A DNA stretch of 64,000 nucleotides from Callorhinchus milii. Taxonomy: Eukaryota. The notes below the pieces were generated by a model. It saw nothing but the letters and a program-made list of their open reading frames with translations, made no database searches and was not told where the DNA came from. Positions within the stretch are counted from its first letter, which is position 1, and each line of letters opens with the position of its first letter. The stretch lies in assembly GCF_018977255.1 (NCBI RefSeq), contig NW_024704755.1, positions 15,314,001-15,378,000 on the forward strand, read 5' to 3'. Of the stretch, positions 1,096 to 63,008 are shown piece after piece. The position numbers and the translations under genes were made by a program.

Positions 1096-4000
1096 TTATG
1101 CGGTTCCTGACTCCATGAAAGTGCCATCTTCGTAGTTTCTGGTCTTTACCTCGGAATACTCTGAATTCTTGTCGCTGTGTTTAGCTTTTCCTGTATTTTT
1201 GGAGCGAGGCAAATCCAGAGCAGCGTATGTCAGCTTGTTAGCGGCTGCTCCTTGCTTGGTCTGCAAAAACAATGTTTGGTTTGTCTTTGTTTGTCTTTGT
1301 TACACAGAGAGATGTACATAGAATGGTACAGGAACTGACCATCCGGTGTTTATACTTCACACGAGCTCCATCCCTTCCTATTTGCTCCTATAACTCTCTT
1401 ATCTCTTCCCCTCATGTATGCAACACGTTTTAGGTTACATTATTCCAAACGCTTCACCCCATGGACGATTGGTAAATGTATTGCAAACTGCGATATGTAG
1501 CTGCAGATTTAAGGGTTTTAGATCTCAACGATGAGCTGACAACTGCTTTCATGGGTTGGCGAAGATCAGTTAGTGCTGCAATTCCTGATTGCTCTGTGGG
1601 ACATTGACATCTCAGGACGTCTGGATTGTAATATCTCTGATCCTCGTTAATTTATTTGCTGAATTGTTGACTCATTTATAAAGATAAAATCTAAGGACTA
1701 TATAGCTCAGAAGACCAGACGGCCCATCGTACACGTGCTGTATGTTTGAAAGAATTATCTATTGATTCCCATTTACCCGCCTTTTCGCCAACACTCCCTA
1801 AAATTGATCCGTTTTACATATCTTCATTATCTTTAGATAAATAAATGATATTGGTTGAATCCTGGAAAGCTGAAAATGTTCCACAACTAAATGCAGCATC
1901 GAAAACGAGGTAGAAGATTGGAGGAGGGGACAAAATCATAACGATGAAAGTCAATGAACCCAATTTACCAAACCTGTCCAATACAAGATTTCTCCATGCT
2001 GTGTACCTGGGCGTATACTGTCCTGTCTTCCTGATGTTTAGTTCTTGGAGTTTTATTGGAACTTCTCAAATCCAATGTTACATAAGCCACGTTGTCACCC
2101 GCTGCTGCCTCCCCCGCCTGTAAAACAAAGGTACGTGGTTGTTCCGTTGCCTTTCTTGGTCTGTCATCTTTGACCATGGAATTGAATAAGTGGAGGATTT
2201 AGGGGAAATAAACTGCTGTCAAGTTGAAATAGTTAAAGACATATCTTCATTAAGAAGATCGAGTTCTGTCTGGAGGCAGTGAAATTCATTTTTGCAACTG
2301 ATGTTTTGCAATCTATGCCCGTGAAAATATGTTGCATATCTGATTAGATGGATCAAACAAGAATTATCACTTAAAATATTATCACTTAAAACATGCTTGG
2401 ACTCCTCGTGTTCCAAGTCATATGGCTGACTCTGAAGGATTACTAGAAAATTAAATTACTGTCAGCAAACTTTATTTATTTATTTATTTATTTAAGTAAC
2501 AGCTTAATCCTGAAAAGGGAAATAAATAGGTCTGTAATTCTGGAGGAATGATGTTAAGGTGGGAAACTTTCAGTTCACAGTCCAAGTGAACATGAGCTCT
2601 ACCTTGTTGGAGGTTGGTTGTCAAACCAAGTTCCTGTATTCTTGTTAAGTTTACTTTAAAGATCATTTGAGAATCTTCTAACACAGAATGAGGTTTGTCC
2701 GGTGTCCTCGCGAATGGTAATCATGATAAATTGGCGAAACACTTCATGACAGTTTATCGGACCATATTGTGTGTAAGTTGGTTCGACCAAATAGAGTCGC
2801 TACAAAGACAACGATTGTTCATGAAGCATTTTAAGATGTTTGGAATGATACCGGCCACAATGATAATCACTGAATTGGTCCATTGGTCACCCAAATAATT
2901 TGGTGATAGACTTACCTGATCTTCAGGATTGCCCAATTGAGTCAGGTTTCCCTTTGATCCTAAATATAAATTAAATTTACTGAATGAAATATTTACTCAG
3001 TTTCAATATTAACACTAGAATAATATTATTGCTCTACATTTCAGGATGAGTGAAATAGAAATATTCGCCTGCACCCTTTTCCTTCTCTCTGAATCTCCCC
3101 TTCACTCATACTTTCCGAAATCCTCAAAACAGTGGAACTCTTTCCCTTGAACATTTTAAATTTCAAACTTGGCAACGCCTATCCACTATTCCTTAATCAT
3201 TTTCATTTCTCCTCTTGGCCGAGGCCACTCACCTGGGACTCTCCATAATAAAAACATATTTTCTATGTCACAATTTCAATATAATATTTAACTGAATTCT
3301 ATTGCTGATATACATCTGCTGTGAGTCCCTGCATTTATTTGATGCCATTCATCACTAGAGTTTCTTACAAATGCATGTAATTCATCGTATTTGAAGCCGA
3401 TTGCAATAGGTTAGAGCAGATTTCAGACACTGGATGTTGTAAAATGAGAAATTCTGGGATACTAAAGTTCACCATGTGAAATGATTACAGTCCCTAATCT
3501 GTTGCAATAACTACCAGTAATTGGCATTGTATAACCGTAGCTTCTACCTTCGAATTTGAAGTAACAATCAAGACACTTTTTTCCATTTGCTAACCCAGTG
3601 GTGCTTTCTAAAGTTTTGTATCAATGTGTAATATTTACAATTAATTGCAATGAAATCAGAATTTTCTTACCGTTTTTCTTTTTTAATTGGCATCGCTTCC
3701 CAAATATGATCACAAGCGCCAGAAATGCGAAACCACCCGCTGCACATCCAGCCCACAATAAATAATGGGTTACCTTGCTACTACCGAGAGAAACTGTGAA
3801 AAGTGAGGTGAAGCATTGTGCAGCGCATCAATTTGGACTTCCACTCATCGCAGTAGAATACAAATGTTATGCATATCATTAATGAATTATATTCGCAGTG
3901 ATAATATATTCGCAAACTGAGTATTAAGCCCAATAAGTTGTTTAAATATTATGACTAATCTTAATCTGTGCATTTATTGAAATAAGAAAAAAAATGACAG

Positions 4001-6812
4001 GAGCATCACCGAAAAGAGTTTGATATTTTGTAGTATAATTAATGACATCTGATCGCGCGTATTTTTATTAATGCTCTTGATTTTATTACACAGGCGAGGT
4101 GACACCAAAACGTACCACTGATTTTCACAGGAATCCCCACAAAGTACAAACCATAAATTGTAGTTTAAGACGGCTGTACCCAGTGACATCTCATCACAAG
4201 CAATGAAACGTGCTCACTTGTTATTAATAAAACGAGGGAACATTATGGAATAGAATTACATTTTGTGATCAAATGCCTTGTGTTAAAAAGAATTTGAAAA
4301 TTAAGCAGTTTTAGGATGCTTCCATGTATATAATATCTGTTAGGTTTAGCAAAACCTTCACATCAAAAGATACAATATATTTTATGACCATCATCCACAA
4401 CTCCCTCATCACCATTCTTAACACATTGGTCTCTCATCATATCAGCCATCGCTTCCTATCCCCTCAGGTTCCCCAGGACAACAGTCACACTCCATCCCTC
4501 AAGTCACAGTTTCTTGCTGCTGAACATTGGATGTTCCTCATGGCTCTATCCTCGGTCCTCTGCTCTTCACTATCTATATGCTCCCACTTGGCGACATCAC
4601 TGTAGACATGTATTGCATATTCACATGTACAATGATGAAAACCATCTTCCTCCACACTCGACCTCCAACTTCGACCCGATTGCTGTCAGACATCAAGTGA
4701 TTGATCAGCTCTGACTTTCTTCAGCTGAATAATAATAATAATCCATGCATTTTATACTTCGACTTATATATCGAATGCAAGGATTAATATTATTATTATC
4801 TCGTTATTGTTGTCTCAAATCGCTTCAGATGATTTACTTGATGAATCAATGCAACAAAGCATTCCTCTGAAAATTCAATTAATAACAGTTGACTTTTTAA
4901 AAATCTTTTAGCATCTTACCTTTAGATTTTGGGAAAGCGAAGGTGGCAATAGCTGAAGTCTTGAGGCTGACGTGAGACACCAGACAGGTATAAACAGACC
5001 CATTCTGGCCAGGCTGTGTGTCTTCGATAGAGCTCGAGGCCTTATAGAGATCCTCTGAGTTCTGCTTCTCAGTGGAACCTGACTCTTCCAGCTTTATTTC
5101 TGGTGTTGGCACAATTGTGGTGCCATCTTTATACCAAGTAAGGGTGATTTCCTTTGGGTGAAACAAGGCAGTTTCACACACAAGAGTCTGAGGCTTAGGT
5201 GAATTTCTAGAGAAAATCTTCAGTGGAGTTGGGGGAGCTGTGGAACAGATAATGGAGGAGAATCGTGTTAATTTTGATCAATCGATGGGACAAACTTTAT
5301 TTTGATTTGTATCCGATACATTTCTTTGCAAACTCCTGACGCCTGAGTACAAATAGAGGTTTTCTAAGATACACAAATATCCCTTCTCACAGCAGCATTG
5401 GCCTTACTCCTGCTTTAATTACTTTGTGCTTTTATCAATTAATATTTTAAATTAATATTTATGGTTAAGTTTGCAATACATTGGAATTCATTTGGGAGTT
5501 TTGATTTACCTACTCACTTTCCCTCAACTTACAGAGCTCAGAAACCATCCACATAAGGTGATATCACTTGTATATTTCCTTTATAATTTACTGCAGAAAT
5601 ATTCAAGATCTGAAACCATTTATAAATAAAAATCTGAATTTAATTTTGCTTCCACACTCCACACGCCTAATAATAATCCCTCAAGAAACAAAACAACAAT
5701 AAATTGGTCACTTCAATCCACGACTGTTTGTGGGAGACGACTGTGCGCAATTGGCTGCCGCATTTTGCCCACAAATATACAGTCAATTCACTTTACAGTA
5801 TATTCTGTGAAGTGCTTTGAGACATCGAGAAGACGTGAAAAGCGCTATATCAAATGCAAGAATTATTATTCTTATTATTATATTCATGTCCTTTATCTTT
5901 CATATTATTACTAACTTTGATGATTGGCAGGTAGAAATGATCACTTAGAAATGCCTAACCAATATGTTGAAGTGTCGAACAGAGGAGATAGAGGATTCCT
6001 GGCAGAGGTGTGCACACTGTGTTAGTGTGGATCAATTGGTTGTATTTTCGCCTCTGCGTTAGAATTTTGCTCTGCTGACCACTGCTGAATGATGGTGAGA
6101 AAATAATCATTTCATTTGAATATAGCGCCTTATCACATCTTCGAGACATCTCAAAGTACTTTAAAAGCCAGATTGTGAAAGTTATTAATGGACAAACGGT
6201 ATAAATAACGGTATAGCATTCACCGCATTTATTACTTGTTATGTAATTTCTAAACGCCAATTTTGCTCTTCATTCACACTCACCGCGCACAGTTAATCGT
6301 GATCCAGGTCCTGTTCCAATTATTGATCCCTGACGGACCACTAGACAGCGATAGACTCCAGAGTCCTGTAAACTCACATTCAGGAACTGGCAGAAGCCGC
6401 TTCCTTTAGTTTTTACACCAAATAGTTTCCTGAGATCCTCCTTTGTATCCAAATAGCCGCTCTCACCCTCCTTATGCCACTGCACCTTCACTCCTGAACC
6501 ATCTTGAGGGAAGCGAAAGATACAGTGGAAGGTGACATTTGTCCCTCTGATGACAGCCACATGGTCGGGGATTTGAGTCACTTTCAACGATGAATCGCCA
6601 GCAACTGTCAGAAAATAAAGTCAGAGTTCTTAGATGGTGAGCTATGGAGAAAACAAATGGGTAAAAGAGGAATAAATGTAACTATATAAGATAAATGGCA
6701 CACGGAAACAATTTGCACATGTTTCATAGAAGAACTGAATTATAGAATGAACATACACACCTGTTGAAATAATATATAAGGCAGACAGGCACAGAAAGAC
6801 CACATTCCTCAT
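1096..6812 (-). CDS. Gene A: VJ-C1-TM inhibitory Ig-superfamily receptor (NKp30/SIRP-like), 7 exons, about 377 aa
   Basis: Exons: leader 6812-6761 (MRNVVFLCLSALYIIST), V 6604-6284 (..VTFHC..VQW..DSGVYRC..GTGPGSRLTV), C1 5237-4920 (LVCETALFHPKEITLTW..YTCLVSH), TM 3793-3671 (YLLWAGCAAGGFAFLALVIIF-GKRCQ), linker 2959-2916, 2117-2007 (VAYVTL, TVYAQ), 1260-1096 (LTYAAL, SEYSEV, stop). All introns are GT-AG with phases 1-1-1-1-0-0. Total 1134 nt, no internal stop. Confidence 0.9.
4385..4700 (+). mobile_element. Old L2 RT relic in the C1-TM intron (paralogues at 17600-17900, 24000-24260, 31890-32220)
   Basis: CTATCCTCGGTCCTCTGCTCTTCACTATCTATATGCTCCCACTTGGCGACATC encodes an (S)ILGPLLFTIYMLPLGDI RT motif. 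It is shared by the paralogues, so it predates their duplication. Confidence 0.75.
5668..5882 (+). mobile_element. Partial SINE (other partial copies at 15095-15313 -, 22402-22630 +, 60184-60436 -, 63575-63956 +)
   Basis: Same body and/or tail as the full-length copies. Confidence 0.85.
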
Positions 6813-6886
6813 GTCTGTCTCTGGCTCTGATGGCTTGCAACAAGTGAACGTGTATTATTTGATACAGAGTGGGTTGTGTGACACTG

Positions 6887-11069: not shown

Positions 11070-11324
11070 AAGGAAAGGAATGATGCAGAGGAAGGTGATG
11101 TTTGTCTCTGATGGCAATCACATATTCTGGGGTTAATGTTACTTTGACCGAAAAATAATCAATAACTATCAGAAAAAGAAGGCCAGATAGAGGCAGTAAC
11201 ATAACATCCCCGTCTCATGATTCTGAGCAGTTTTGACCCTGATCATCTGTAAAGAGCTGATCTGCAACAAGGCTGCATAAATGTTTTGCTGCGAAAAATG
11301 TTTCTGTGTCATTTGACTTCCTGT
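11070..11324 (-). pseudogene. Pseudogene G1: old leader/V relic with promoter ETS site
   Basis: Acceptor TTTTTCTGATAG, then KVTLTPEYVIAIR.. resembling KVTQIPDHVAVIR. A leader relic is fused next to the acceptor. ACTTCCTGT at 11316-11324. Confidence 0.6.
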
Positions 11325-13900: not shown

Positions 13901-14791
13901 TAAATGGTATAAATCAAATGCACTCAAATATGTTTGATACAGAATACCAGTCCATAATTTACGATCTTCTGTTTCTTCCAGTCAGTGTAATTCCATCAGC
14001 ACAATTCAATCACTTCTAATCTTTTCTTCCTTACTTCATCTATAACAAAACAAGCAGTGCAAATGAGAATATCACCAATCCTTTGATTCTTTGATTAATT
14101 GTAATAATTACTGCTTTTCACCCAAACAAATTGATGTTTCAATCTGAAATGTTTACAACGAGACTGCAAACATAAAATGTTTAGTTTCATTCTACACGGT
14201 TGCTAAACTTATTCAGATAACATGATTTGCAGTTAGATTGCACCTTTCATGTTGGAAGGAGGTCTTAAATTGCTTGGCTCAGTTTGTTGGGCACCGGAGC
14301 TGGAGACGGAAGCCGAAATATTACATGTGACTGCCTGATATCATTTGTCTCTAAGACAATATCAATTTATTATAACACTGGATATATTTTCAACTTATCT
14401 TCAAGAATATTCAGCCTTAGGGAAGCAGAGCTTATGAATGACGACATTAACATGAATATGATAACCAAGTAACAGATATGGAAGTTATTACATGAATATG
14501 TTGTTCAATATTGTTACAGATAACTGGAGAGTTGGATGAGATATTTATATAACCACTGATTATTAGAGAATCCTCCAACAAAACAAAACGTAATTCCCAC
14601 ATTTTGAACTATATTGTCCCGGTTGCCAACAACAACAACAACTTGGATTTATATAGTGCCCTCCATGCCGGACGGCTTGTCAGCGAACAACATAAACTTG
14701 TTTCCTCTCATTGATAATGTTAAGGCTTACGCCATAAACACAATAATTGTAAACGAAAGACAATGTCATTTTGAAACAAAGAAAGCCTTAC

Positions 14792-17700
14792 CGTTCAAAT
14801 GGTTTGGCTCTAATGCAGTCAACAATGAAGATTGTCAACACTATCAGTAGGAAGAAACATAATATAAACCGAAAAACCATCACATCGTTGGACATTCCAC
14901 GGTAACCTAGAAAACAAATATCGCACTGTAAAATGTTTACATGAAATCTACTGAATAATTAGACTGTATTGGGAAAGTGCACATGTTCTTAGATAATTGA
15001 TATTGGAAGCTACAATGAGGTGGACGATTATTATAAACTGCGCATTCAATTGATCCACAGCAAACAGTCGTGAATATCAGCAGGCAGTTTTTTGAATTGA
15101 CTGTATATTTGTGGGAGAAACACGGCAGCCAATTGCGCACAGCAGTGTCCCACAAACAGTAGTGGATTGAAAATGACCAATTTATTATTGTTTTGTTTTG
15201 GAGGAATTATTATTAAGTGTGTGAAGTAGGGAAAGTTGCGCAAGGTTTCGCCCTGCCTGCAATTGAACCCAGGTGTCTCGCTTGCAAGGCGAGTGCTCTA
15301 ACCACTGAGCTATAACATCACTGTGTTTAGTGAAGTTATAGAGAAACAGTTATACATTATGCGTTAAAAGTTCCCCTGAGACTGTTTGCTCAGCTTCAAA
15401 CGTACCAAATATGACCCCTGTTCCGACCCGAGCCATTGAGAAGCGGTTACCATCGTAATCAAAAATTATAGCATAGGACATCTGCTATCATATCGAAAAT
15501 TCTTTAAAACTTCTCACAAACGCGTTTTATTTTATGTGCGGTGATTGTTGTTATAAAGGAAAAGCAGCAGAAGATTTGATCGAAAAAGTCCTCAGTAAAT
15601 GGAACGGATTGATGGACGAATATTATTTGTGTTTTATTTGTGAACATTCATCAATCCAAAAGTCCAATTTCTGATTTCAAACCTAATTGCGTGTGGAACC
15701 CGCAGCACTATTGCACTTTAGAAGTTAGTAAATGACAAAAAATAACATTTTGTAGGAGACATATTTAGAATTTAATAACAAAACAAGAACATCCCCAGGT
15801 TTGAGGTATTCTTCGATTCAAAGACTATATATCTTTAGTTGATTGTGTTATATATAGACATTTACACACATGTAGTTTACAGCGAGAAACTTGTATGATT
15901 ATCAATTGCAGCGTAAATAAATGTAAATACAATTTCCAGTAACAAGGTGTTTAACAACAAAAGACAGAAAGACAAGATGTTTCCTGCCATACAATCCCGT
16001 GTCGGGTTTACAAACTGTGTCGCTGCGACTCCGGGAGTCCGGAGGTGCCGTGAGATGTCAGACAGCAATAACCAGCCCCGCGCTGTCCCGGCGGTATCTC
16101 TTCTCTGTGGCTACAGAGCTCGAAACTTCATAAAGTCCCTTTGAATTATTTCTTTATTACAATTTATCCCCGTTTTAACTTCACTGCCATCTTTATTCCA
16201 AGTGAGTTTGATATCTCCGGGTACAACCCACCCATATCACTCACAAAGTGTTCACGTCTTCTACTTGGAATAATGCGTTCAGTTTAGAGCAGTAAACAGT
16301 TCAGAGATAAACAGTTTAGAGATAAACAGTTTAGAGATATACCAGCCCGGGGGGATGGGTGGGGAGGGGGGGTGTTAAATTAGTGCAGGACACGTCCTTC
16401 TAGAAGAGGAATCAAAAATAAGGCAACATAATCTTAACATTGTGGCTGAACCCCTCAGAAGTGATGTGGGACGTTTCTCTTCAGATGGAATTTTGGAATT
16501 CACTCAAATCAATAGCCATAGATGCAGATTCAAACGGGATATTTAAAAGCAACATCGATAATAGTTTTAAGGGATATGGAAATTGGATTTAAAATTCTGC
16601 CGCCATTCCAGAGCAACAACAACCTGGATTTTTCTAGCGTCCTTCACCAGGAGATTGTTCCGAAGAAGACAGGAGATTTCACTATAATTAGAGATATAAG
16701 CAGAACTTCGCCGTTCACACCACAATTGCGCAAACAGTGGAGGTTTGATTGACCAAACTACTATGATTATTATTTTTAAAAAAATATTTTAAAGGGATTA
16801 TTAACCCCGGAAAAGCGATCCGCGAATCGACGGACAACTGGGTTCCTACTTACTGCTGGTAAACAGATGCCAAACATTTCGCCCTGACCGGGAATCGAAC
16901 CCAGGTCCCCTCGCATTGCATTGGATTGTCTATGACCTGGGACATTCGGAAAAAATGCGATCAAGATAGAAAAAAAAATTGGATATAGTAAACATTCTGG
17001 TTACGACGCTAAGGAGGGATATAAATGTTTGAAAGCATTGTAAGCTTTAGACATTTATGTATATAATTGATGAATACTGTTTTAATGTAAGTATTAAGCA
17101 CAGTTACCGGTTTAAATATTATAAATATTCTCAATCTGTGCATTTATTGAAAGCAGAATGAAAATTACAAGGAGATCAGAACTGAAAGCACTTTGATATT
17201 TTGTAGCTTAAGATAGGTGTAGCTAATGACATCTGATCACATTTATTGTTATGATTACTGTTGATTTTAATACACGGACGAAGGTGACACACGGGAAACC
17301 AAAACGGACACCTGATATTCAGAGGAAACCCACAAAATAAAATCCATAATTTGTAGAGTAAGGCTGTACCTATTGACTTCTGATCGCAGCGATAAAACAT
17401 GAAACATGCTATTAATAAATGGAAGGAACATTATGGGATGGAAAGACATTTTGTGATCAAATGTGTTGTGCTGAAACCAATGTTTTAAAAAGTGATGCGG
17501 GTTTAGGATACTAATATGCACATAGATAACAGCGGTTAAGTTTAACAAAATGTTTGATGATTCACAACAAATATTTCACAATCAAACAGTGGAATGCATT
17601 TGATCACCATCATGCACAATACTGTTGCCTCCTATTAACTCAGGCATTGCTTCCTATCCACTCAGGTCCCCCAGGACAACAGTCACATTCCATCCCTCAA

Positions 17701-19522
17701 GCCATAGGTAGTTGCTGCTGAACAATGTATGCTCCTCAGGGCTCTATCCTCGGTCCTATGCTCCTCACTATCTATATGCTCCATCCTGGAGACATCACCG
17801 TAGACATATATTGCACGTTCACATGTACGACAATGAAACTCAACACTCCCATCTTCCTCCACACTCGTCATCAAGCGATTGATGAGCTCTGACATTTGTC
17901 AGCTGAATAATAATAATAATCCATGCATTTTATATAGCAACTTATATATCGAATGCAAGGATTAATATTATTATTATTATCTCGCTATTGTCGTCTCAAA
18001 TCGCTTCAGATGATTTACTTTATAAATCCATGCAACTAAACATCCCTATGAAAATTCAGTTAACAACAGTTGACTTTTTAAAAATCTTTTAGCATCTTAC
18101 CTGCTTTAGGTTTTGGGAAAGCATAGGTGGCAATAGCTGAATTCTCGAGGCTGATGTGAGATACCAGACAGGTATAAACAGACCCTATCTGGCCAGGCTG
18201 TGTGACTTCAATAGAGCTTGAGGCCTTCTAGAGATCCTCCGAATTCTGCTTCTCAGTGGAACGTGTCTCTTCCAGCTTTATTCCTGGTGTTGGCACAATT
18301 TAGGTGCCATTTTCATACCAAATGAGGGTGACTTCCTTTGGGTGAAACAAGGCAGTTTCACACACAAGAGTCTGAGGTTTAGCTGAATTCCTAGAGAAAA
18401 TCTTCAGTGGAGTTGGGGGAGCTGCAGAACAGATAAGTGTTAATTTTGATCAATCGGCGGGACAAGCTTTATTTTGATTTGTATCTGATATATTTCTTTC
18501 TTTGCAAGCTTTGCTTAGATACACAAATATGCCTCTCATAGCCTTTCTCTGGCTTTAATTACTTTGCAGTTTTATCAAGTAATATTTATTCATAACGTTT
18601 ATATTGCATATTATTACTGACTTTGATGATTGGTAGGCAGAAATGATCACTTAGAAATGTCTCTTCAATATGTTGATCTCACAAACAGAGGAGATAGAGG
18701 ATTCCTGGCAGAGGTGTACACACTGTGTTAGTCTGACTATACTGATAGTATTTTCGCCTCTGAGTTAGAATTTCGTTATGTTGATCGCAGCCGACCGATG
18801 GTGATAAAATAATTGTTGCAATTGAATATAGTGCCTTATCACGTCTTCGAAATGTCTCAAAGCACTTTAAAAACTAGAATGTGAAAGTTATAATGGACAA
18901 ACAATATAAATGACAATATAGCATTCACTGCAGTTACTACTTCTTATGTAATTTCTAAATTCCAATTTCATTCTTCATTCACACTCACCGCGCACAGTTA
19001 ATCGTGATCCAGATCCTGTTCTAATTATTGATCCCTGACGGACCACTACACAGCGATAGACTCCAGAGTCCTGTAAATTCACATTCATGAACTGGAGAAA
19101 ACCACTTCCTTTAGTTTTCAAGCCAAATTGTTTCCTGCGATCCTCCTTTGTATCCAAATACCCGCTCTCACCCTCCTTATCCCATTGCACCTCCACTTCT
19201 GAACCATCTTGTGAGAAAGGAAAGATACAGTGGAAGGTAACGTTTGTCCCTCTGATGGCAGCCACACTTTCAGGGATTTGAGTCACTTTCACTGAAGAAT
19301 CGCCATCAACTGTCAGAAAATAAAGTGAAACACTGATTTCTCAGATGGTGAGCCATGGAGGAAACAAATGAGTAAGAGAGAAAATAACTTAAGTATATAT
19401 AATAAATGTCAAAAGAAAAGTAGTTTGCACACATTTCATAGAATAATTGAATTATTGAATGAACATAAACCTGTTGAAATAATATGTAAGGCCGACAGGT
19501 ACAGAAAGACAACACTCTCCAT
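14792..19522 (-). CDS. Gene B: chimeric paralogue; either a C1-skipping activating receptor (leader-V-TM with Arg) or a pseudogene
   Basis: Intact leader 19522-19471 (MESVVFLYLSALHIIST) and intact V 19309-18989. Intact TM exon 14906-14792 (tag/gtaag; GYRGMSNDVMVFRFILCFFLLIVLTIFIVDCIRAKPFE) with Arg codon at 14871-14869. Both intervening C1 exons are disabled. A possible terminal mini-exon at 14523-14514 (R-Y-L-stop) is speculative. Confidence 0.55.
15985..16275 (-). pseudogene. Decayed D-type C1 exon inside gene B
   Basis: Aligns to gene D C1 (LTWNKDGSEVKTG..GLYEVSSS). It is frameshifted, the first Cys is TGT>AGT, the GT donor is lost (GGCAG|GAAAC), and the 5' end is replaced by a 15-bp tandem repeat. 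Confidence 0.8.
16285..16340 (+). repeat. Short tandem repeat (AAACAGTTTAGAGAT, about 3 copies)
   Basis: Directly visible; occupies the place of the 5' end of the D-type C1 relic. Confidence 0.8.
18101..18421 (-). pseudogene. A-type C1 pseudo-exon of gene B
   Basis: Colinear with the C1 exons of A and C, but has in-frame TAA (18302-18300) and TAG (18230-18228). A 12-nt pyrimidine-rich stretch upstream of its acceptor in A (GATTCTCCTCCA) is missing. Confidence 0.85.
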
Positions 19523-38980: not shown

Positions 38981-39044
38981 AATAGGATTAAAAACAAATA
39001 GAATGGCAGGAGGCAGCAAACACTGAATGAATATTTTGGATGGA

Positions 39045-45600: not shown

Positions 45601-48600
45601 TAGGAATATATCTTACCTTTCACTTTGTTTAATTGGCATTGCTTCCCAATGATGATCAAAAGCAGCAGAAATACCAGCCCTCCAGCTGCACCTCCAGCGA
45701 TCAGCGCATAGTGAGGCTGACCGTCACTCTCTACAAGAAATGCATAAACTGAATGTACTATTGACCCCAGCAATGAGTTATAGTTTCAGTAACTGTGTGG
45801 GGGGAATCTTCTTGCTTAACTCCTGATAATCCTTTTAAGTCAGAAACATGGAGAACAGTGTTCATAATGGACAATTTGAGTGGTTAAACCCCAGCAGTTC
45901 CTCAAAGCACATTCTGGACTTTCATGGTTCTAGCCAGCCTGCGCCTCATACAATTCGAAGTTAGGTAATAATAATAATCCTTGCATTTGATATAGCACTT
46001 TTCACGTCTTCTCGACGTCTCAAAGCGCTTCACAGAATATGCTGTAAAGTGAATTGACTGTATATTTGTGGGCAAAACGCGGCAGCCAATTGCGCACAGC
46101 CGTGTCCCACAAACAGTCGTGGGATTGAAAATGACCAATTTATTATTGTTTTTGTTTTGGAGGGATTATTATCAGGCTGTGTGTGGAGTAAGGAAACTTG
46201 CCCAAGGTTTCACTCTGCCTGGAATTGAACCCAGGTGTGTCGCTTGCAAAGCGAGTGCTCTAACCACTGGCTACAGGACTCCAAGTAGAGTTAGAGAGTA
46301 AGAGTGATAAATAGAGTTAGAGAGTGATACCAGTCCACTTCGGTGTTTATACTCCATACAAGCCCCCACTACCCTCTTGCTCGCATACACAGCAAGTTTT
46401 CTGTTAAATACTGTACATTGAAGCAATTTATTTCACCCGCGAATGCAATAACTATAATAAAATAATAAATATATATAAATATAGTATAATAAAATATAAT
46501 AAGAATAAAGGTAAGAAAGCACATTGTATTCCAGACACAGAGAAATTCGAGGTAGACGGCATTATGATCAATCATATTTTCATTTGATATACCCTCGTGA
46601 GGAAAAGCCTAAAATTGAAACACATCACAAATTGAATTGATTTAGTGGATGAAAATGTAATACCAAAAACAGTAATCCTTAAGTTTGACATAGCAACTTA
46701 TCACGTCAACGAGATATCTCAAAGCGCTTCACAGGATATCTTGTGGATTAATTGTGGATGTTGTGGGCGAAATCCATTTGGTAACCAATAATCAATTGCA
46801 GAGAGGGATTTACCATGTAATAACAATAAAATTGGAAATACTGGGATTTCAGGTATTCAGGTGCATTTCTAATTGAACAGAATCTAAGAGGTTGAAACTT
46901 GATGAGTTTGTTAAGAGACTTCTCGGAAAGATAGTATGATTACTGTGGTGTCCATCTCTATATGGCTCGGGTCAAATACTGTTCACATAAACATTGTCAT
47001 TTTATATATTTCTCTGGAGTATTTGGTCAGAAAATGATATGACTCTAATCTTCAGTATAAGTAAAATTTAATGTTTTCAAATAAGAATTTAGCTAACAAT
47101 AATTGACAATAGGATATCGCTGGAATTCGGAAACTGACGTGAATGCACATGTTCTTTTTTTTTAGTGGAAGCCACAATGAGGTGGACGAATGCTATAAAC
47201 TGCGCATTCAATCAATTGAAAATAACAGCAAAGAGTAGTGAAAATTAACGCGCGGCATTTTATTAGTGATGTTATAGAGACACAGTTATATATTATGTGA
47301 CAGCAGTTCCCCATTGACTGTGCGCTCAGCTTCAAATGCACCGATAGAATGCGTGTTCTGACCCGAGCCATAGAGAGCCACAGTCACCAAAACTCATTGC
47401 ATTGGAAATGTGCTCTCATCCCGAAAATCTATAAAACATCTCACAAGCGAGTTTTATTTTAATGCAGTGATTGTTGTTATAAAGGAATACGCAACAGAAG
47501 ATTTGCTCCAAATCGTCCTCAGAAAATGGAGTGGATTAATGAACCAATAGTATTTATGTTTCATTTGTGAACGTGTTTCAGTCCAAAAGTGCAATTCCTG
47601 ATGAACGCGCAGGACTATTGCACTTTAGAGAGGTTACTACATGTCAACAACGCTTTGAATGAGACATATTCAGAATTTAATAACAAAACAAGAACATACG
47701 CAGATTTGAGATATTCTTCGATTCAAAGACTATACATTTAAAATTGGATTTTAAATATTTTTGGAGTTTTCAGCGAGAAACTTATACGACTATAAATTGT
47801 AGCGTAAATAAATGTAAATACAACTGCTAGTAACAAGGTGATTAACAACAAAAGACAAGTAACTTCTTACCATCATCTTCTGTTTTGGATTCATAAACGG
47901 CGTAGACGGCAACTGCTGGAATCCGAAGGCTGACATGAGATACCACACAGGTATAAATAACTCCGCTCTGCACAGACTCTGTCTCTTCCATAGAGCTCGA
48001 AACTTTGTAAAGTCCATTTGAATTCTTCTCTTTAGTGAAATGTATCCCAGTTTTAACTTCATTGCTATCTTTATTCCAGGTGAGCGTTACATCTTCCGGG
48101 TAGAACTCAGCCGTTTCACACACAAGAGTCAAAGACTTTGATGAATCTCTTTCAGAATCTCTGTGGAATATCTTCAGTGGGGTTGGGGGGACTGTAGGGC
48201 AGACAGTGGGGCAGAATCACGTTACTGGTGAGCAGTTGGAATATGAAATGTTATTCCCAGTTGAAATGTACATGAATTGATTCCGAGCGACATTTTAACA
48301 AAGGAAGGTTTTCCGAGACGTTAACCCATGTGACGGGCGCTATATAAATGTACGTTATTGTTGGCATAACAAGGAATCTGGATTGCAACGGCAAGAAACT
48401 GATCCTGTTCAGATGTTTTATTTGGAACAACGTTTCTGGTACCAATATTAAACGATGCCCTGCAGGAGGTCCAGATATTCATTCACCAAATTAACAGTTG
48501 GATGAAAGGATTTAACTTCGACGATAAGATGGGTAAACGTGATTTATGTTTGATAGATCTGAGAAGTAATTTGATTGAGCTGTCAACGAATACTAAAATA

Positions 48601-50538
48601 GTGCATTCTTTCCAATAGAGGAATAACAATAGAAAGGGACACAATCCTAATACTTTGGCTAAACCTGGTGAGACGTGAAATGAAACCATTCTATTCACAT
48701 GTAGTTCAGTGAAATTGTGGAAATGACTCCCATAAGTGGCCTTAAATGCCGATTTAAGTGGGATATTTATTGATAAGGGAGAGAAATAAAAGTTTTAAGG
48801 GGTCTGGAAAGTGGCGGAGGGATTGGATGAAAAGTTCTGCCACCGTTCTCGAACAACAGTAACCTATATGTATTGAGCGCTCTTCACACAGGATACCGTC
48901 CCGGAGAAAACTGGAGATTTTACCACAATAATAATAATAATAATCCTTGCATTTGATATAGCGCTCTTCACGTCGGGAGGACGTCCCAAAGCGCTTCACA
49001 GAACATTCTGCAAAGTGAATTGACTGTATATTTGTGGGCGAACGCGGCAGCCAATTGCGCACAGCAATGTCCCACAAACAGTCGTAGATTGAAAATGACC
49101 AGTTTATTATTGTTTTTGGTTTTGGAGGGATTATTATTAGGCTCTGTGTGGAGTAAGGAAACTTGCCCAAGGTTTCGCCCTCTGCCTGGAATTGAACTCA
49201 GGTCTCTCAGACAGAGACATAAGCAAATCCTCCCCATTCACACCAACATTGATTTTGTTCTGCTCTGTTTTTAAATTTGATAAGTTTCCAACTAATTTTC
49301 CATAATTAGAACAGGTAATTCAAAATAATTTCACGACTGTTTGTGGGACATTGTTGAGCGCCAATTGTTAATGTTATTTCAAATGGTCTAAGTGTGTTTA
49401 AACATTTGCCTTTGATATGAATCAGTAATTTTTTAAATGTCTGAACCCCAGTACAAGGGATTTTGATTAATAATAATAATAATGCTTGAACCTGAAGCCA
49501 TGGGGCTCTCGCTCAAACATTGCATTTCTTTGTCTGTGTACACTATAATCTTCATGTCTTGATGTGGGAAATCTGACTAAATGCGTTCAGGTCAGAATAA
49601 AATACCATATAGAGTTAATATTCTACTGACGGCAGGAGGAGGGTTATACATGTTTGAAAGCGTTGCATAACGGAGTTATTAGCGACTCACATTCCCACTT
49701 TGCTGTGTGGTATAAACCCGCCGTTCCCTTCAGTACAGTAACGAAGGGGCAAAACTGCATTTGAATAATATTTCATTGATAAAATGTGTTTCGGGTTAAA
49801 GTAAAATCTGTTCCCGTGTCCTGTGCTATCATAACTTTTTGTGAGAGTAGAAAATAGGACTCTCGCAAAAAGTTATGACAGCACAGGACGTCAGTTAATG
49901 TAAAATAGTTTATCCATAACGATTTCAAATTGCCCCAATACTCGCCTTTCAGCATTCCCCGTTCCTGTTGCACTCACACTTACCATGTACAGTTAAACTG
50001 GTTCCAGTCCCATTTCCTGCTATTTTCCCCTTATGGACCGCTGCACAAATATAGACTCCGGAGTCGTTGAAATTCAGATTTAGGATCTGGAACGTTTTGT
50101 AATCAAATATTCTCCTGTTGTCAGGTCGTGTGTGCAAATATTCCCTCTCTCCTCGCTTCCACCAATATAATGTTGTATCTGAACCAGATTGACTGTCAGC
50201 AAACTTGCAGCCGAAGGTAACGTTTGCACCTCGGATTGCTGTTCGCTCTGCAGGATACTGAATCACTCTCATCGATGTACCACCAGTAACTGTGAGAAAA
50301 TACATCAAATCTATCATTAGTAATTGTGGAATCTAAAACTAGAAAAGTGACAAAATAGCTATAGGACAGGATGGAGAGAAGGTGGAAGAAAGGAAAAGAA
50401 AAAGATGAATGTATTCATTAAACACATTTTGAAACTCATGAATATCGTTTTGTATTTAAGATCCGCTGTAATAAAACAATTACCTGTGAAAATAATCCCC
50501 ATCAGAGAAAGACAGGGGAACACATCACTCGCCACCAT
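42696..50538 (-). CDS. Gene D: divergent-lineage VJ-C1-TM inhibitory receptor, about 374 aa
   Basis: Exons: leader 50538-50484 (MVASDVFPCLSLMGIIFT), V 50289-49984 (..VTFGC..LYWW..DSGVYIC..GNGTGTSLTV), C1 48191-47871 (LVCETAEFYPEDVTLTW..YTCVVSH), TM 45730-45617, 44-nt linker 43912-43869 (GPRRNQEGSSHYEEQ), 43518-43408 (VAYDSL, TVYTQ), 42869-42696 (LTYASL, TQYAEL). Same exon phases as A and C. Total 1125 nt. Confidence 0.9.
44350..44700 (+). mobile_element. CR1 3' fragment
   Basis: QRLEELGLFTLKQRR..DLMEIFKIMSG motif. Confidence 0.65.
45966..46282 (-). mobile_element. Full-length SINE, same family
   Basis: Head, body and tail present; lies in the C1-TM intron of gene D. Confidence 0.9.
48927..49208 (-). 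mobile_element. SINE with truncated head
   Basis: Body and tail intact; the first ~40 nt of the tRNA head are missing. Confidence 0.9.
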
Positions 50539-52079: not shown

Positions 52080-52680
52080 GAGCCATCTCAAGCGCTTACT
52101 CAAACACACCACCTGCTCCCTCGATCCCATCCCCACCTCTCTCCTCGTCTCCCGGCTCCACCTTCTGGCCCCCCCTCCTGTCCAATGTCATCAACCTCTC
52201 TGTCCACTGGTTCAGTTCCCACCCCCCTACAAACAGCTGTCATCACCCCCATCCCAAAAAAAACCTTCCCTGGATCCATTCCTCCTCTCCAGCTACCACC
52301 CCATCTCTAATCTCCCATTCCTCTCCAAGGTTCTGGAACAAGTCGTCGGTCCCAGCTCCGCTCCTTTCTCTCTCGCCATTCCCTTATGAACCCCTCCAAT
52401 CCGGCTTCTGCACTTCCCACAGCACAGAAACAGCTGTGGTCAAAATCACTAATGACATTCTGAACATCTGTGATCAGGGCTCCCTCTGCCTCGTTGTCTT
52501 CCTCGACCTCTCTGCCTCGTTCGACACTGTCGACCACTCCATCCTCATACACCGCCTCTCCGCCTTGCTCAATCTTCACGGATCTACTCTTGCTTGGTTT
52601 GATTCCTATCTCTCTCACTGTCTCCACTTCGTTGCCTCTAACGGCTTCTTCTCCAGTCCCCGCACTGTCACATCTGGGTC
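52080..52680 (+). mobile_element. L2 RT fragment at the break in pseudogene F V exon
   Basis: VVKITNDILNICDQGSLCLVVFLDLSASFDTVDHSILIHRL. Confidence 0.9.
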
Positions 52681-52989
52681 TTGAGAGAAGGGAAAGATAC
52701 AGCGGAAGGCAAGGTTTCATCCTCTGATGGCAGCCACGCTGTTAGGGATTTGAATCACTTTCAAGCTAGAATCTCCAGCAACTGTCAGAAAATAAAGTCA
52801 AACACTGATTTCTTCGATGATGAGCCATTGAGAAACTAAATGGGTAATAGAGGTAAAAACTTAAATATATATGCCAAATGGCACATGGAAACAAGTTTGC
52901 ACATATTTCATGGAAAAAACTGAGTTATGGAATGAACCCGTTGAAATAATATATAAGGCCGACAGGTACAGAAAGACAGCACTCCCCAT
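52680..52989 (-). pseudogene. Pseudogene F: A/C-type leader plus truncated V
   Basis: Leader 52989-52938 (MGSAVFLYLSALYIIST). V starts at 52781 (VAGDSSLKVIQIPNSVAAIRG*NLAFRCIFPFSQ), has a TGA, and is cut by an L2 fragment at about 52680. Confidence 0.85.
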
Positions 52990-61559: not shown

Positions 61560-63008
61560 TTATATGGATCTTGGTTCCCTGCAGATAGCTGCTGCTGCTC
61601 CTCCGTGGTTTCTCACATGGACCGCTGCATACTCTGTATTCTTAATGGTACGTTTTAGGTTTTCCCATTTCATTGGAAGGATGTAAATCCTGAGAGGCAT
61701 ATGTCAGCTTGTTCCTTCTGCCCCTTGCTTGATCTGTAAAGACAATGTTTGAGAACATAATTATATGAATTAATTTACAGAAATCTCTTGAATATGCAGC
61801 ACCACTTGCTCCATAGCTCATTTGGTGAAGTCACTGCTCCTTTAAAGAACTGAACAAACAGAATCCTGCGGCTACAAATTCTGTTACGAATAGGTTAGGA
61901 AAGAAAAGTGAAAATCAACCAGTGTATGAATTCTTCATTGACCTACAGAAATGTGGGGTGTATATTTCTATATATAGTTGATGTCCCAGTGCCTCATAGA
62001 TTGAAACACAATTCCTAGTCTTACACAAGAAAAATAAGTATGTGGCTATACAGTGGCAGATTGTCGTGATCATATCACAACCCAGGACAGTGCCAGAGAG
62101 TGAAGGTTGGGGTAGAAAGAAAGATTAACCAAATAAACCATCTTACAATGAACATTGAAGTGAGTTCCACTCTATTTACCAAAGCAAGGAAAACCAATTG
62201 GATACAAAAGGTTTTACCATACCTCTTTGACCCGAACTCAGAGTTCTACAGCTGCATTTCTATTGATACATGATGCTTTTCTCCATTTATACACACAAAA
62301 TTGAATTTTGGTATATAGGGACAATTTGTAAGTTTGCTGAAGAGTCAATTAACAGTGAAGAAGATTGTAGTTTCATTAAAAATATATTAAGACTGGTAGA
62401 TTGGACAGAGAGGTGGCAGATGAAATTAAATGGAGAGCAGGGCAGTTGTACATATTGGGATGTGTACCCGGGTCTCACGGCATGCTGCGGGTGAGTGGCC
62501 CAGGCGGAACGTGCATTTTATACAATAGAACATTTTCTACCTGTATTTTGTAAAACTAATTAATTGTAGCGTGATATGGAAAAGATGGCTGAATGGGATG
62601 TGGACTCTTTGAAGAGCGAATAAAGGCACCATGGGCTGAATAGCCTTCTGTACATTTTGTAGTTGTATCACAACAAACTACGGAAAATTCTGATTAAATA
62701 TGCAGCTAAATATATGCAGGGAGAGATTCTGCTAGGACATTTGTATTTGTCCATCAATCGCAATATATTAATGATTAGCGCCGCTTTACAGGATATTTTT
62801 CTCTCCTTGTCATCTGGAATTCTCTAAGCTATAAACTGAATTTTTGTGTTAAATGAAACATTTACATTTATCCTAAATGAAACAGGAATATATCTTACCT
62901 ATCTTTTTAATTGGCATTCTTTGCCAATGATGATCAAAAGCAGCAGAAATACCAGGCCTCCCCCTGCACATCCAGCGATCAGCAAAATGGAAGGATAATC
63001 GTCACTCT
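61560..63008 (-). CDS. Gene E (3' part only): D-lineage receptor with truncated cytoplasmic tail (decoy or pseudogene)
   Basis: TM exon 63008-62899 (ESDDYPSILLIAGCAGGGLVFLLLLIIIGKECQLKR-TAG) ends in a stop directly before GTAAG. The last-exon homologue 61733-61560 is frameshifted. The linker and first ITIM exons are deleted. Ectodomain exons would lie beyond the window. Confidence 0.7.

What the first reader, a model, noticed from the sequence alone, without database searches (positions are those of the whole stretch)
1096..63008. Germline VJ-C1 paired immune-receptor family: inhibitory, activating and tailless members in one cluster
Seen: five receptor loci plus three relics share one exon/phase plan, a single V exon that already contains a J-like GxG(S/T)xLxV strand, and a C1-set domain. 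Known: C1 domains outside antigen receptors and MHC are rare (SIRP, tapasin, PRARP-type genes), and germline-joined VJ domains mark NKp30/NITR-type receptors. From memory, human NKp30 has 9 residues between the F-strand Cys and GTGNG; A (C-LVVRQGSII-GTGPG), B, C and D all show the same 9-residue spacing. Inference: an NKp30/SIRP-related paired receptor system in an early jawed vertebrate that combines antigen-receptor-like VJ-C1 ectodomains with ITIM, Arg-TM or null signalling ends. I cannot tell whether it has been described.
Basis: partly seen in the sequence, partly recalled or inferred. Interest (0 to 1): 0.85.

Follow-up and report, generated by a model that had tools for sequence, protein, structure and literature searches.

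The report
Elephant-shark SIRP-like paired receptor cluster
This stretch of elephant-shark (Callorhinchus milii) DNA is part of a large cluster of immune-receptor genes that are cartilaginous-fish relatives of mammalian SIRP "don't-eat-me" receptors, which suggests that this receptor family is far older than the tetrapod origin recently assigned to it.

Summary
On the minus strand lie five receptor loci and three relics with one exon plan: leader, a single V exon with a germline J-like strand, C1-set exon, TM exon, three tail exons. The window is Callorhinchus milii scaffold MU249845.1:15,314,001-15,378,000, inside a cluster of at least 410 kb.

- **Intact:** A and D are seven-exon genes. D equals a RefSeq protein exactly.
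- **Damaged:** C has lost its TM-exon acceptor. B has two stop codons in C1 and is followed by an Arg-TM exon. E ends in a stop just after its TM.

The family is large and, as far as sampled, confined to sharks, rays and chimaeras. ITIM-tailed and Arg-TM members sit side by side with near-identical ectodomains.

The closest relatives outside cartilaginous fish are tetrapod SIRPs. The alignment to a bat SIRPα-like protein runs from leader to C-terminus, with all four tail tyrosines in register. The V domain alone is no closer to SIRP than to NKp30.

I read the cluster as cartilaginous-fish SIRP-like paired receptors with one C1 domain instead of two and an Arg-TM activating cassette. RefSeq already labels them "SIRPα-like". 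I found no paper describing them, but several key papers could not be read.

The parts
1096..6812 (-). Locus A: intact 7-exon inhibitory receptor gene, 377 aa (leader-V-C1-TM-three tail exons)
   Evidence: Exons: 6812-6761, 6604-6284, 5237-4920, 3793-3671, 2959-2916, 2117-2007, 1260-1096. All junctions are AG/GT and the reading frame is open. Tail tyrosine motifs are VAYVTL, TVYAQT, LTYAAL and SEYSEV.
11073..11151 (-). Relic of a V exon
   Evidence: tblastn hits to A's V exon, split over two reading frames, one with an in-frame stop.
14788..14906 (-). Arg-TM exon: transmembrane segment with an embedded Arg, a 10-residue tail and a stop (GYRGMSNDVMVFRFILCFFLLIVLTIFIVDCIRAKPFER*)
   Evidence: Polypyrimidine tract plus AG acceptor in phase 1. 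Homologous to the C-terminus of Heptranchias P0020, with the Arg and the VD(H/C) motif aligned. Three further copies lie elsewhere in the cluster.
16024..16248 (-). Relic of a D-type C1 exon, just upstream of the Arg-TM exon
   Evidence: tblastn with stops and frameshifts. 74% nucleotide identity to D's C1 exon plus downstream intron. The same relic precedes the Arg-TM copy of L001 and one of the two copies in L002.
18101..19522 (-). Locus B: leader (19522-19471), intact V (19309-18989), C1 pseudo-exon (18421-18101). No ITIM-type TM or tail exons follow.
   Evidence: In-frame TAA at 18302-18300 and TAG at 18230-18228. Splicing V directly to the Arg-TM exon would give a 163-aa open frame. The paralogous module B' (locus L002) has an intact C1 and a clean 269-aa V-C1-ArgTM frame.
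28956..34397 (-). Locus C: A-like gene whose TM-exon acceptor is lost. It is either rescued by a cryptic acceptor (372 aa) or ends after C1.
   Evidence: Exons: 34397-34346, 34182-33862, 32743-32432, 31269-31156, 30438-30395, 29616-29506, 29120-28956. The ancestral AG is TG at 31280-31279. The RefSeq product at this place is 235 aa, consistent with leader-V-C1 plus read-through. An N at 31169 lies in the TM exon.
42696..50538 (-). Locus D: intact 7-exon inhibitory receptor gene, 374 aa
   Evidence: Exons: 50538-50484, 50289-49984, 48191-47871, 45730-45617, 43912-43869, 43518-43408, 42869-42696. The product is identical to RefSeq protein P0176. Tail motifs are VAYDSL, TVYTQT, LTYASL and TQYAEL.
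52678..52989 (-). Relic: leader (52989-52939) plus the first 35 codons of a V exon (52782-52678) with a stop, cut off by a LINE insertion
   Evidence: tblastn. A reverse-transcriptase-like open frame on the plus strand at 52028-52681 abuts it.
61560..64000 (-). Locus E (its 5' part lies beyond the window): end of C1 (64000-63964), TM exon ending in TAG (63008-62899), decayed last tail exon (61733-61560)
   Evidence: Sequence read. The translation ends ...IIIGKECQLKR*. The segment holding cy0 and cy1 in D is deleted in E. cy2 is readable only across two frameshifts.

Best explanation
The window is a 64-kb piece of a multigene cluster of at least 410 kb in the elephant shark. The cluster encodes cartilaginous-fish members of the SIRP (signal-regulatory protein) kind of paired immune receptor.

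**Ectodomain.** Each gene encodes a germline-joined VJ-type V domain followed by one C1-set domain. Mammalian SIRPs have two C1 domains.

**Inhibitory members (A, D, perhaps C).** These have an uncharged TM and a tail with four tyrosines in two pairs. By inference from SIRPα, ligand binding to the V domain leads to phosphorylation of the tail tyrosines. The tandem SH2 domains of SHP-1/SHP-2-type phosphatases then dock and the cell is restrained.

**Activating members (B' in the neighbouring module; B here, which is damaged).** These join an almost identical ectodomain to a separate exon encoding a TM with an embedded Arg and a very short tail. By inference, the Arg pairs with an acidic residue of an ITAM-bearing adaptor.

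**Truncated members (E, and C if its TM exon is not spliced).** These would be signalling-null or secreted decoys, or are simply dying genes.

**Dynamics.** The cluster evolves by tandem duplication, gene conversion, exon loss and reuse of the Arg-TM cassette.

**Shown versus inferred.** Shown: exon structures, domains, tail motifs, homology to SIRPα, and the pairing of ectodomains. Inferred: phosphatase and adaptor recruitment, expression, and the ligand.
For: **Identity of the window.** It is 100% identical to MU249845.1 of GCA_018977255.1. Family genes lie from 15.247 to 15.657 Mb.

**Gene models.** Canonical splice sites throughout. D is identical to RefSeq P0176.

**Domains.** V-set and C1-set pass the Pfam cut-offs. 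In the AlphaFold model, block-mean pLDDT is above 90 over most of both domains and the TM helix spans 234-262. The best structural matches are Fab light chains.

**SIRP kinship.**
- In an exhaustive profile search of 1.84 billion representatives, every family-type hit whose name I looked up (about 20, plus those already named) is chondrichthyan.
- The only relatives from other vertebrates I could identify are tetrapod SIRPs: a bat SIRPα-like protein (159.8 bits, matching C1, TM and tail) and a skink protein with SIRP-like tandem V-C1 units.
- A word-limited search gave a hyena SIRPβ1-like protein as the only outside hit.
- SIRPα 2WNG is the second-best PDB match.
- BLASTP of D against bat SIRPα aligns V-C1 to D1-D2 (3e-15). 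It also aligns C1-TM-tail to D3-TM-tail (4e-14), with the four tyrosines in register: VAYDSL/ITYADL, TVYTQ/TEYAS, LTYASLD/LTYADLD, TQYAEL/SEYASV.
- hhalign of the family against SIRPα gives probability 99.7%, E 1e-26 over 350 columns.
- The C1 profile scores 46 bits against SIRPα D3 and 32 bits against D2.

**Paired nature.** RefSeq and Ensembl models from at least three shark species (Heptranchias, Scyliorhinus, Heterodontus) and C. milii carry a conserved R...VDH transmembrane cassette. On the ectodomain tree the 8 Arg-TM rows need 8 changes. Most sit next to an ITIM-tailed or short-tailed relative: D and P0187 are 98% identical, A and B' 89%.
Against: - There is only one C1 domain, against two in mammalian SIRPs.
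- The V domain alone is not closer to SIRPα D1 than to NKp30.
- The activating TM uses Arg in a cassette that, by eye, is not similar to the Lys-TM of SIRPβ.
- I had no transcript data. The C1-to-Arg-TM splice rests on one Ensembl model (P0187) and shark RefSeq models.
- Among the four C. milii Arg-TM copies, pN is at least pS in five of six pairs, and the exon is only slightly more conserved than its flanks. This gives no sign of purifying selection.
- In this window B, C and E are damaged.
- Synteny with human 20p13 and the presence of a CD47 ligand were not tested.
- PRARP sequences could not be compared.
Confidence: 0.72

Rival explanations
1. The genes belong to the NKp30 (NCR3) family, for example the 'shark NCR3 family' of Kinlein et al. 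2021. On this view they are NKp30 relatives that carry an extra C1 domain.
For: - The V exon is of the VJ type, with the same 9-residue F-G spacing and a GxGNGT-like motif as human NKp30.
- The V profile scores slightly better against NKp30 V than against SIRPα D1: 34 vs 25 bits, and hhalign E 4e-10 vs 1e-8.
- The activating forms have Arg in the TM, like NKp30.
- RefSeq names a C1-skipped isoform 'NCR3-like'.
Against: - NKp30 has no C1 domain and no four-tyrosine tail. Collinearity over the whole protein is with SIRPα.
- The per-domain score against NKp30 (30 bits) is no higher than the same profile gives for unrelated Robo Ig domains.
- NKp30 is absent from the top PDB hits of the V domains.
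- The genes marked NCR3 in white shark and sawfish lie between AIF1 and DDAH2 on the MHC chromosome (chr19 and chr34). This family's sawfish and catshark members lie on contigs of 54 Mb and 199 Mb, which do not fit the MHC chromosomes.
- I could not read the Kinlein paper.
Confidence: 0.1
2. The genes are the cartilaginous-fish counterparts of PRARPs. [quoted passage not shown]
For: The architecture is the same: VJ-C1-TM. PRARP is cited as a VJ gene of the MHC or its paralogous regions.
Against: Among the top 150 hits of the exhaustive search whose names I checked, the relatives found outside cartilaginous fish were tetrapod SIRPs, and none was named PRARP. The other bony-vertebrate hits checked (coelacanth, bichir, lungfish) lack the J-like strand; some further named hits were not inspected. 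The tail is collinear with SIRPα. No PRARP sequence was available, so this was not tested directly.
Confidence: 0.07
3. The genes are B7/butyrophilin-type ligands (V-C1), for example B7-H6 relatives, rather than receptors.
For: PD-L1 V domains are the best PDB hits of A's V domain, although weak (E about 1e-4). B7-H6 appears among the V-C1 hits. Several shark members are auto-named 'NCR3LG1-like' or 'CD276'.
Against: The G strand carries the J-like GxGxxLxV motif, which is absent from the B7-like hits inspected. D's full V, including the G strand, aligns to TCR and VNAR V domains. The ITIM tails and Arg-TM partners are receptor features.
Confidence: 0.03
4. The region is mainly a graveyard of decaying Ig-superfamily duplicates, and the 'activating' and 'tailless' forms are pseudogenes with no role.
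For: B, C and E each carry a disabling lesion, and there are three relics. The Arg-TM copies show no purifying selection. Transposons are abundant.
Against: A and D are intact, and D matches a RefSeq model. B' in the next module has an open V-C1-ArgTM frame. The Arg-TM cassette and its pairing with ITIM forms recur in several shark species and in C. milii.
Confidence: 0.08

Closest known systems
SIRP family (SIRPα, SIRPβ, SIRPγ) of tetrapods
   Same: - N-terminal V domain with a germline J-like strand, followed by C1-set domain(s).
- The inhibitory member has a tail of four tyrosines in two pairs, which aligns residue for residue.
- The family contains inhibitory, activating (basic TM residue, short tail) and signalling-null members with near-identical ectodomains.
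- The genes sit in a cluster.
   Different: - One C1 domain instead of two. It is most like the membrane-proximal D3.
- The activating partner uses an Arg-containing TM cassette on its own exon, not a Lys.
- There are many more genes.
- Ligand and synteny are unknown.
- A 2026 survey dates the SIRP family to tetrapods (PMC13262535).
NKp30 (NCR3) and the MHC-linked shark NCR3 family
   Same: Non-rearranging VJ-type V exon. Same short F-G loop with a GxGNGT-like motif. Arg in the TM of the activating form.
   Different: NKp30 has no C1 domain and no four-tyrosine tail. NCR3 genes lie in the MHC class III region in shark and ray, and this family appears to lie elsewhere.
[quoted passage not shown] 2019, Chen et al. 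2018)
   Same: Non-rearranging VJ-C1-TM genes (from my own knowledge).
   Different: They were described in bony vertebrates. Sequence relatedness could not be tested here. I did not establish whether they have a paired ITIM/Arg-TM organisation.
UrIg and UrIg2 of elasmobranchs
   Same: Non-rearranging VJ exon followed by C1-set domains, in cartilaginous fish. UrIg2 is among the best C1 matches in the PDB.
   Different: UrIg2 has several C1 domains in a row, nine in nurse shark, and resembles an antibody heavy chain. The paper does not mention ITIMs at all. The V domains are not close: UrIg2 is absent from the V-profile hits.
Teleost NITRs and other paired receptor families (KIR, LILR, PILR)
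   Same: Multigene clusters of inhibitory (ITIM) and activating (charged TM) receptors with similar ectodomains and rapid birth-and-death evolution. Some NITRs have a J-like motif (from my own knowledge).
   Different: Their membrane-proximal domains are not C1-set. They show no collinearity with the SIRPα tail.

Membership tests
SIRP family | N-terminal V-set domain with a germline J-like G strand (GxGTxLxV) | tested here: met
   Pfam V-set. The motif is in all four V exons and is conserved across 18 family members. It aligns to SIRPα D1 through the G strand.
SIRP family | Two membrane-proximal C1-set domains (D2 and D3) | tested here: not met
   There is a single C1-set exon per gene. It scores 46 bits against D3 and 32 bits against D2.
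SIRP family | SIRPα-type cytoplasmic tail: four tyrosines in two ITIM-type pairs | tested here: met
   Four motifs each in A, C and D. All four are in register with bat SIRPα-like P0164 in BLASTP and hhalign. Phosphatase binding itself was not tested.
SIRP family | Closest relatives outside the lineage are SIRPs | tested here: met
   In the exhaustive search, the only relatives I could identify outside cartilaginous fish among the names and sequences checked were tetrapod SIRPs. The word-limited search gave SIRPβ1-like as the only outside hit.
SIRP family | Activating partner with a basic TM residue and a short tail | tested here: inconclusive
   Arg-TM exon at 14906-14788, and an open V-C1-ArgTM frame in the neighbouring module. 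It uses Arg, not Lys. B is broken in this window. No transcript evidence. No purifying selection among copies.
SIRP family | Binds CD47 through the V domain | not testable with these tools
   No ligand data and no search left to look for a C. milii CD47.
SIRP family | Conserved synteny with the human 20p13 SIRP cluster | not testable with these tools
   All flanks I could fetch (10 kb each) hold only family genes.
NKp30 / NCR3 | Ectodomain made of a single VJ-type V domain, with no C domain | tested here: not met
   A C1-set exon follows every V exon.
NKp30 / NCR3 | Location in the MHC class III region (AIF1-NCR3-DDAH2) | tested here: inconclusive
   NCR3 genes sit there in white shark and sawfish. 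The sawfish and catshark members of this family lie on contigs whose sizes do not fit the MHC chromosomes. The C. milii scaffold could not be placed.
NKp30 / NCR3 | V-domain sequence specifically NKp30-like | tested here: inconclusive
   hhalign E 4e-10 against NKp30 and 1e-8 against SIRPα D1. The F-G loop length is the same. The scores are at the level of generic Ig domains.
PRARP | Non-rearranging VJ-C1-TM architecture | tested here: met
PRARP | Sequence relatedness to chicken or Xenopus PRARP-A/B | not testable with these tools
UrIg / UrIg2 | VJ domain followed by several C1 domains in an antibody-like chain | tested here: not met
   There is a single C1 followed by TM and ITIM tail.
B7 family | V domain without a J-like strand, plus a C domain; acts as a ligand | tested here: not met
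   The J-like strand is present and conserved. The genes have ITIM tails and Arg-TM partners.

The most novel reading that the evidence does not exclude
The SIRP family did not arise in tetrapods. It was already present in the last common ancestor of jawed vertebrates as a minimal VJ-C1 receptor with the four-tyrosine tail. In cartilaginous fish it expanded into a large paired-receptor system in which a portable Arg-TM exon is repeatedly combined with the ectodomain exons of neighbouring inhibitory genes. With its NKp30-like F-G loop and SIRP-like C1 and tail, it would be a living intermediate linking NKp30, SIRP and the non-rearranging VJ-C1 relatives of antigen receptors. It has not been described as such.
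Probability: 0.4. Interest if true: 0.7.

Novelty: new variant of a known kind. Interest (0 to 1): 0.55.

Why it matters
SIRPα-CD47 is a central self-recognition checkpoint for phagocytes and a drug target, so the age of the family matters. A 2026 survey places the family's origin in tetrapods (PMC13262535).

A SIRP-like family with the same four-tyrosine tail in chimaeras, sharks and rays would date it to the origin of jawed vertebrates, about 450 million years ago. It would also show that its basic unit was VJ plus one C1 domain. That is the same unit thought to have been invaded by the RAG transposon to create antibodies and T-cell receptors.

The family also offers a natural experiment in how activating partners of inhibitory receptors are made. 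Here a separate Arg-TM exon sits downstream of otherwise inhibitory-type genes.

All of this is testable with existing elephant-shark RNA-seq and simple binding assays.

Tried and rejected
- **First splice guess for A.** A cryptic AG inside the first ITIM exon was wrong. RefSeq paralogues revealed a 44-nt exon (cy0) that restores the frame through the canonical acceptor.
- **Hydrophobic stretch after D's C1 (47866-47810).** It is T-rich intron in another frame, not a TM exon.
- **PDB profile searches with the V and C1 alignments.** They were swamped by multi-domain Ig proteins and did not rank families usefully.
- **V-only database search.** It returned only C. milii paralogues.
- **dN/dS.** A versus C in V gives 1.9, but from 3 synonymous and 18 non-synonymous changes, too few to claim positive selection. 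The Arg-TM exon gives no sign of constraint.
- **Synteny.** Six gene look-ups returned flanks holding only family genes, and a seventh (P0187) found nothing on record. The RefSeq accession of MU249845.1 could not be matched to the MHC-paralogue scaffolds listed in the MBE 2023 supplement.
- **Papers not held.** Flajnik 2012 (NKp30/B7H6), Ohta and Flajnik 2015, Ohta 2019, the UrIg 2023 paper and Kinlein 2021 (shark NCR3 family) could not be read. A prior description in them cannot be excluded.
- **Large coelacanth, bichir and lungfish hits.** These are B7- or tapasin-like proteins with a V domain and several C1 domains and no J-like strand. They are not this family.


Full report
**What the window is.** The sequence is vertebrate DNA, about 40% G+C, with one N at 31169. 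Protein searches with the spliced product of the first locus hit only cartilaginous-fish proteins, best of all Callorhinchus milii. A locus fetched for RefSeq protein P0176 is 100% identical to window 60538-32696. The window is therefore MU249845.1:15,314,001-15,378,000 of assembly GCA_018977255.1. Other family genes lie between 15.247 and 15.657 Mb of this 18.1-Mb scaffold, in both orientations. The window is thus a slice of a cluster of at least 410 kb.

**Check of the observation.** Six-frame reading and tblastn with the exons of two loci show that all elements are on the minus strand.
- Locus A runs 6812-1096, B 19522-18101, C 34397-28956 and D 50538-42696.
- The 3' part of E runs from 64000 to 61560.
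- There are three relics: a leader plus truncated V at 52989-52678, a C1 relic at 16248-16024, and a V relic at 11151-11073.
- The V exons pass Pfam V-set and the next exons pass C1-set, well above the cut-offs.
- Each V exon ends in a J-like strand: GTGPGSRLTV, RTGSGSRLTV, GRGSGSRLTV and GNGTGTSLTV. Nine residues separate the F-strand Cys from this motif.
- Human NKp30 has the same spacing. I verified this against PDB 3PV6_B.
- The shared exon and phase plan holds: leader ending in phase 1; V, C1 and TM exons 1-1; a 44-nt exon 1-0; then two phase-0 tail exons.

**State of each gene.**
- **A (377 aa) and D (374 aa)** are intact, with AG/GT at every junction. D is identical to RefSeq P0176, which independently supports the exon chain.
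- **C** is a recent copy of A. Their 3' ends are 98% identical over 1.57 kb. C has lost the acceptor of its TM exon: CACAG has become CACTG at 31280-31279. A cryptic AG 9 nt downstream keeps the frame and would give 372 aa. However, the RefSeq product at this place is 235 aa, which is consistent with leader-V-C1 plus read-through.
- **B** has an intact leader and V, but two stop codons in C1 (18302-18300 and 18230-18228), and no ITIM-type TM or tail exons.
- **Downstream of B**, after a decayed D-type C1, lies an exon at 14906-14788. It has a good phase-1 acceptor and encodes GYRGMSNDVMVFRFILCFFLLIVLTIFIVDCIRAKPFER*. This is a TM with an embedded Arg and a 10-residue tail.
- **E** ends in TAG immediately before the donor of its TM exon (...GKECQLKR*). 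It has lost the segment that carries cy0 and cy1 in D, and its last exon is readable only across two frameshifts.

In this window, however, only the inhibitory kind is certainly intact.

**The neighbouring module.** About 30-60 kb away on the scaffold lies a copy of the B-ArgTM-A module (locus L002). It is 98.9% identical to window 1-15093. There the B-type gene (B') has an intact C1. Leader, V, C1 and Arg-TM join through canonical sites into a clean 269-aa frame. An Ensembl model, P0187, likewise joins a D-identical V and a D-like C1 to another Arg-TM exon. In all, four Arg-TM copies were seen.
- Their flanks are only slightly less conserved than the exon.
- pN is at least pS in five of the six pairs.
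- I therefore see no signature of purifying selection on these copies within C. milii. This counts against function.

**The family.**
- An exhaustive profile search of 1.84 billion representative proteins gave 272 hits at or below 1e-30. Among the best 150, roughly 90 are single-gene proteins of 124-504 aa with the family hallmarks: WWKxGE, GNGTGSxLxV, VPPTPLKI and YTCLVSHVSL.
- Every family-type hit whose name I looked up comes from a chimaera, shark or ray. The automatic names disagree with one another: SIRPα-like, SIRPβ1-like, tapasin-related, NCR3LG1-like, Igλ-like, CD276, HLA-DP/DO-like and FcRn-like. That inconsistency marks an uncurated family.
- Many members have long tails with several ITIM-type motifs.
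- Others have a conserved Arg-TM cassette (R...VDH) with a short tail, for example in Heptranchias, Scyliorhinus and Heterodontus.
- On a tree of V-C1 ectodomains the eight Arg-TM rows need eight changes. Most sit next to an ITIM-tailed or short-tailed relative. D and P0187 are 98% identical and A and B' 89%. SH-aLRT support is 99-100 for several pairs.
- This is the classic pattern of paired receptors.

**What it is related to.**
- Among the top hits I examined, the only relatives outside cartilaginous fish were tetrapod SIRPs.
  - One is a bat SIRPα-like protein (P0164, 159.8 bits), whose best stretch covers profile positions 123-354, that is C1, TM and tail.
  - The other is a skink protein with SIRP-like tandem V-C1 units.
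- A word-limited search gave a hyena SIRPβ1-like protein as the only outside hit.
- Human SIRPα 2WNG is the second-best PDB match to A's ectodomain.
- BLASTP of D against P0164 gives two alignments.
  - The first aligns V-C1 to D1-D2 (E 3e-15).
  - The second aligns C1-TM-tail to D3-TM-tail (E 4e-14).
  - In the second, all four tail tyrosines are in register: VAYDSL/ITYADL, TVYTQ/TEYAS, LTYASLD/LTYADLD and TQYAEL/SEYASV.
- hhalign of a 30-member family alignment against P0164 gives probability 99.7%, E 1e-26 and 350 aligned columns. It runs from leader to C-terminus, with the extra SIRP domain treated as an insertion.
- The family C1 profile prefers SIRPα D3 (46 bits) to D2 (32 bits). The VPPTPLKI start resembles the VPPTLEV start of D3.
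- I therefore file the family as SIRP-like, with one C1 domain instead of two.

**Rivals.**
- **NKp30.**
  - The V domain alone does not decide. hhalign gives E 4e-10 against human NKp30 and 1e-8 against SIRPα D1.
  - The F-G hairpin is indeed NKp30-like in length and motif.
  - Against this, NKp30 has no C1 and no such tail.
  - NKp30 does not appear among the best PDB matches of the V domains. For D these are TCR and shark VNAR V domains. For A they are weak PD-L1 hits.
  - The genes marked NCR3 in white shark and sawfish lie between AIF1 and DDAH2 on the MHC chromosome. This family's sawfish and catshark members lie on contigs of 54 Mb and 199 Mb, which do not fit chr34 and chr13.
- **PRARP** shares the VJ-C1-TM plan, but I could not compare sequences.
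- **UrIg and UrIg2** have several C1 domains in a row, and the UrIg2 paper does not mention ITIMs.
- **B7-type proteins.** The ones I inspected lack the J-like strand.

**Structure.** AlphaFold2 with the family alignment predicts the D ectodomain with block-mean pLDDT above 90 over most of V and C1. It also predicts a TM helix at 234-262 and a disordered tail. Foldseek against the PDB returns antibody Fab light chains as best matches (E about 1e-15, about 220 aligned columns). The ectodomain is therefore an antigen-receptor-like VJ-C1 pair.

**How it most likely works.**
- **Shown.** The inhibitory genes encode an uncharged TM and a tail with two repeats of an ITIM (V/LxYxxL), each followed 23 residues later by a second tyrosine. 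This layout is collinear with SIRPα.
- **Inferred from SIRPα biology.** After ligand binding the tyrosines are phosphorylated. They recruit the tandem SH2 domains of SHP-1/SHP-2-type phosphatases, and the cell is restrained.
- **Shown.** Activating-type members combine a near-identical ectodomain with an Arg-TM exon and almost no tail.
- **Inferred.** The Arg pairs with an acidic TM residue of an ITAM adaptor.
- **Truncated forms** (E, and C if unspliced) would be decoys or dead genes.
- **Unknown.** The ligand.

**Novelty.** RefSeq and Ensembl already carry these genes under automatic SIRP-like names, so they are not new to databases. In the library I could search, I found no paper that describes a VJ-C1 SIRP-like paired family in cartilaginous fish.
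- The 2023 and 2025 papers on shark non-rearranging VJ-C1 genes present UrIg as the novel case. The 2025 paper mentions neither SIRP nor ITIM.
- A 2026 survey dates the SIRP family to tetrapods.
- Several key papers were not readable, so prior description cannot be excluded.

I rate the finding as a new variant of a known kind, of moderate to good interest.

Noticed in passing
window 24872-25196, 33146-33467, 37252-37569, 40669-40988, 45966-46283, 48927-49209, 58912-59228, 60195-60436: A family of about 320-bp repeats, 87-97% identical to each other. Four copies have a head that ARAGORN reads as tRNA-Ala(UGC), at 25122-25192, 33147-33217, 40914-40984 and 59158-59227. They look like tRNA-derived SINEs scattered through the introns and spacers of the cluster.
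   Followed up: partly
window 52028-52681 (+), 9697-10194 (-), 9059-10666 vs 39038-40599: Open frames with a reverse-transcriptase-like motif (FLDLSA.FDTVDHSILI), probably LINE fragments. One of them cuts off the V exon of the relic at 52678.
   Followed up: no
window 1-1566 vs 27860-29417: The last tail exon, 3' UTR and downstream DNA of A and C are 98% identical. The rest of the two genes is about 88% identical. This suggests recent gene conversion or a patchwork duplication.
   Followed up: partly
L002 (MU249845.1:15,247,272-15,286,562) vs window 1-15093: A second copy of the ArgTM-A module is 98.9% identical to the window over 15 kb, yet the B-type gene upstream of it is only about 85% identical. 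In that copy the ITIM-type TM exon of B' is truncated (L002 12371-12460). This is a snapshot of an inhibitory gene turning into an activating one.
   Followed up: partly
window 14791-14788: The stop codon of the Arg-TM exon (TAA) is part of a perfect GTAAG donor consensus, which is kept in all four copies. The exon could therefore also splice onward to an unseen downstream exon instead of ending there.
   Followed up: no
window 31169: The single N of the window falls inside the TM exon of locus C (codon X in ...KRCQXKTKN).
   Followed up: no
window 2010-2004 and 29509-29503 (TVYAQ|gt): If the donor after the first ITIM exon is not used, the reading frame continues as TVYAQV, which is an ITSM-like motif, and stops 13 codons later. 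Alternative splicing could thus switch the second tyrosine motif.
   Followed up: no
P0140 (coelacanth), P0155 (bichir), P0142 (lungfish): Large proteins with a V domain that lacks a J motif, followed by many C1-set domains, appear among the profile hits from basal bony fishes. They are unnamed in RefSeq, and I do not know what they are.
   Followed up: partly
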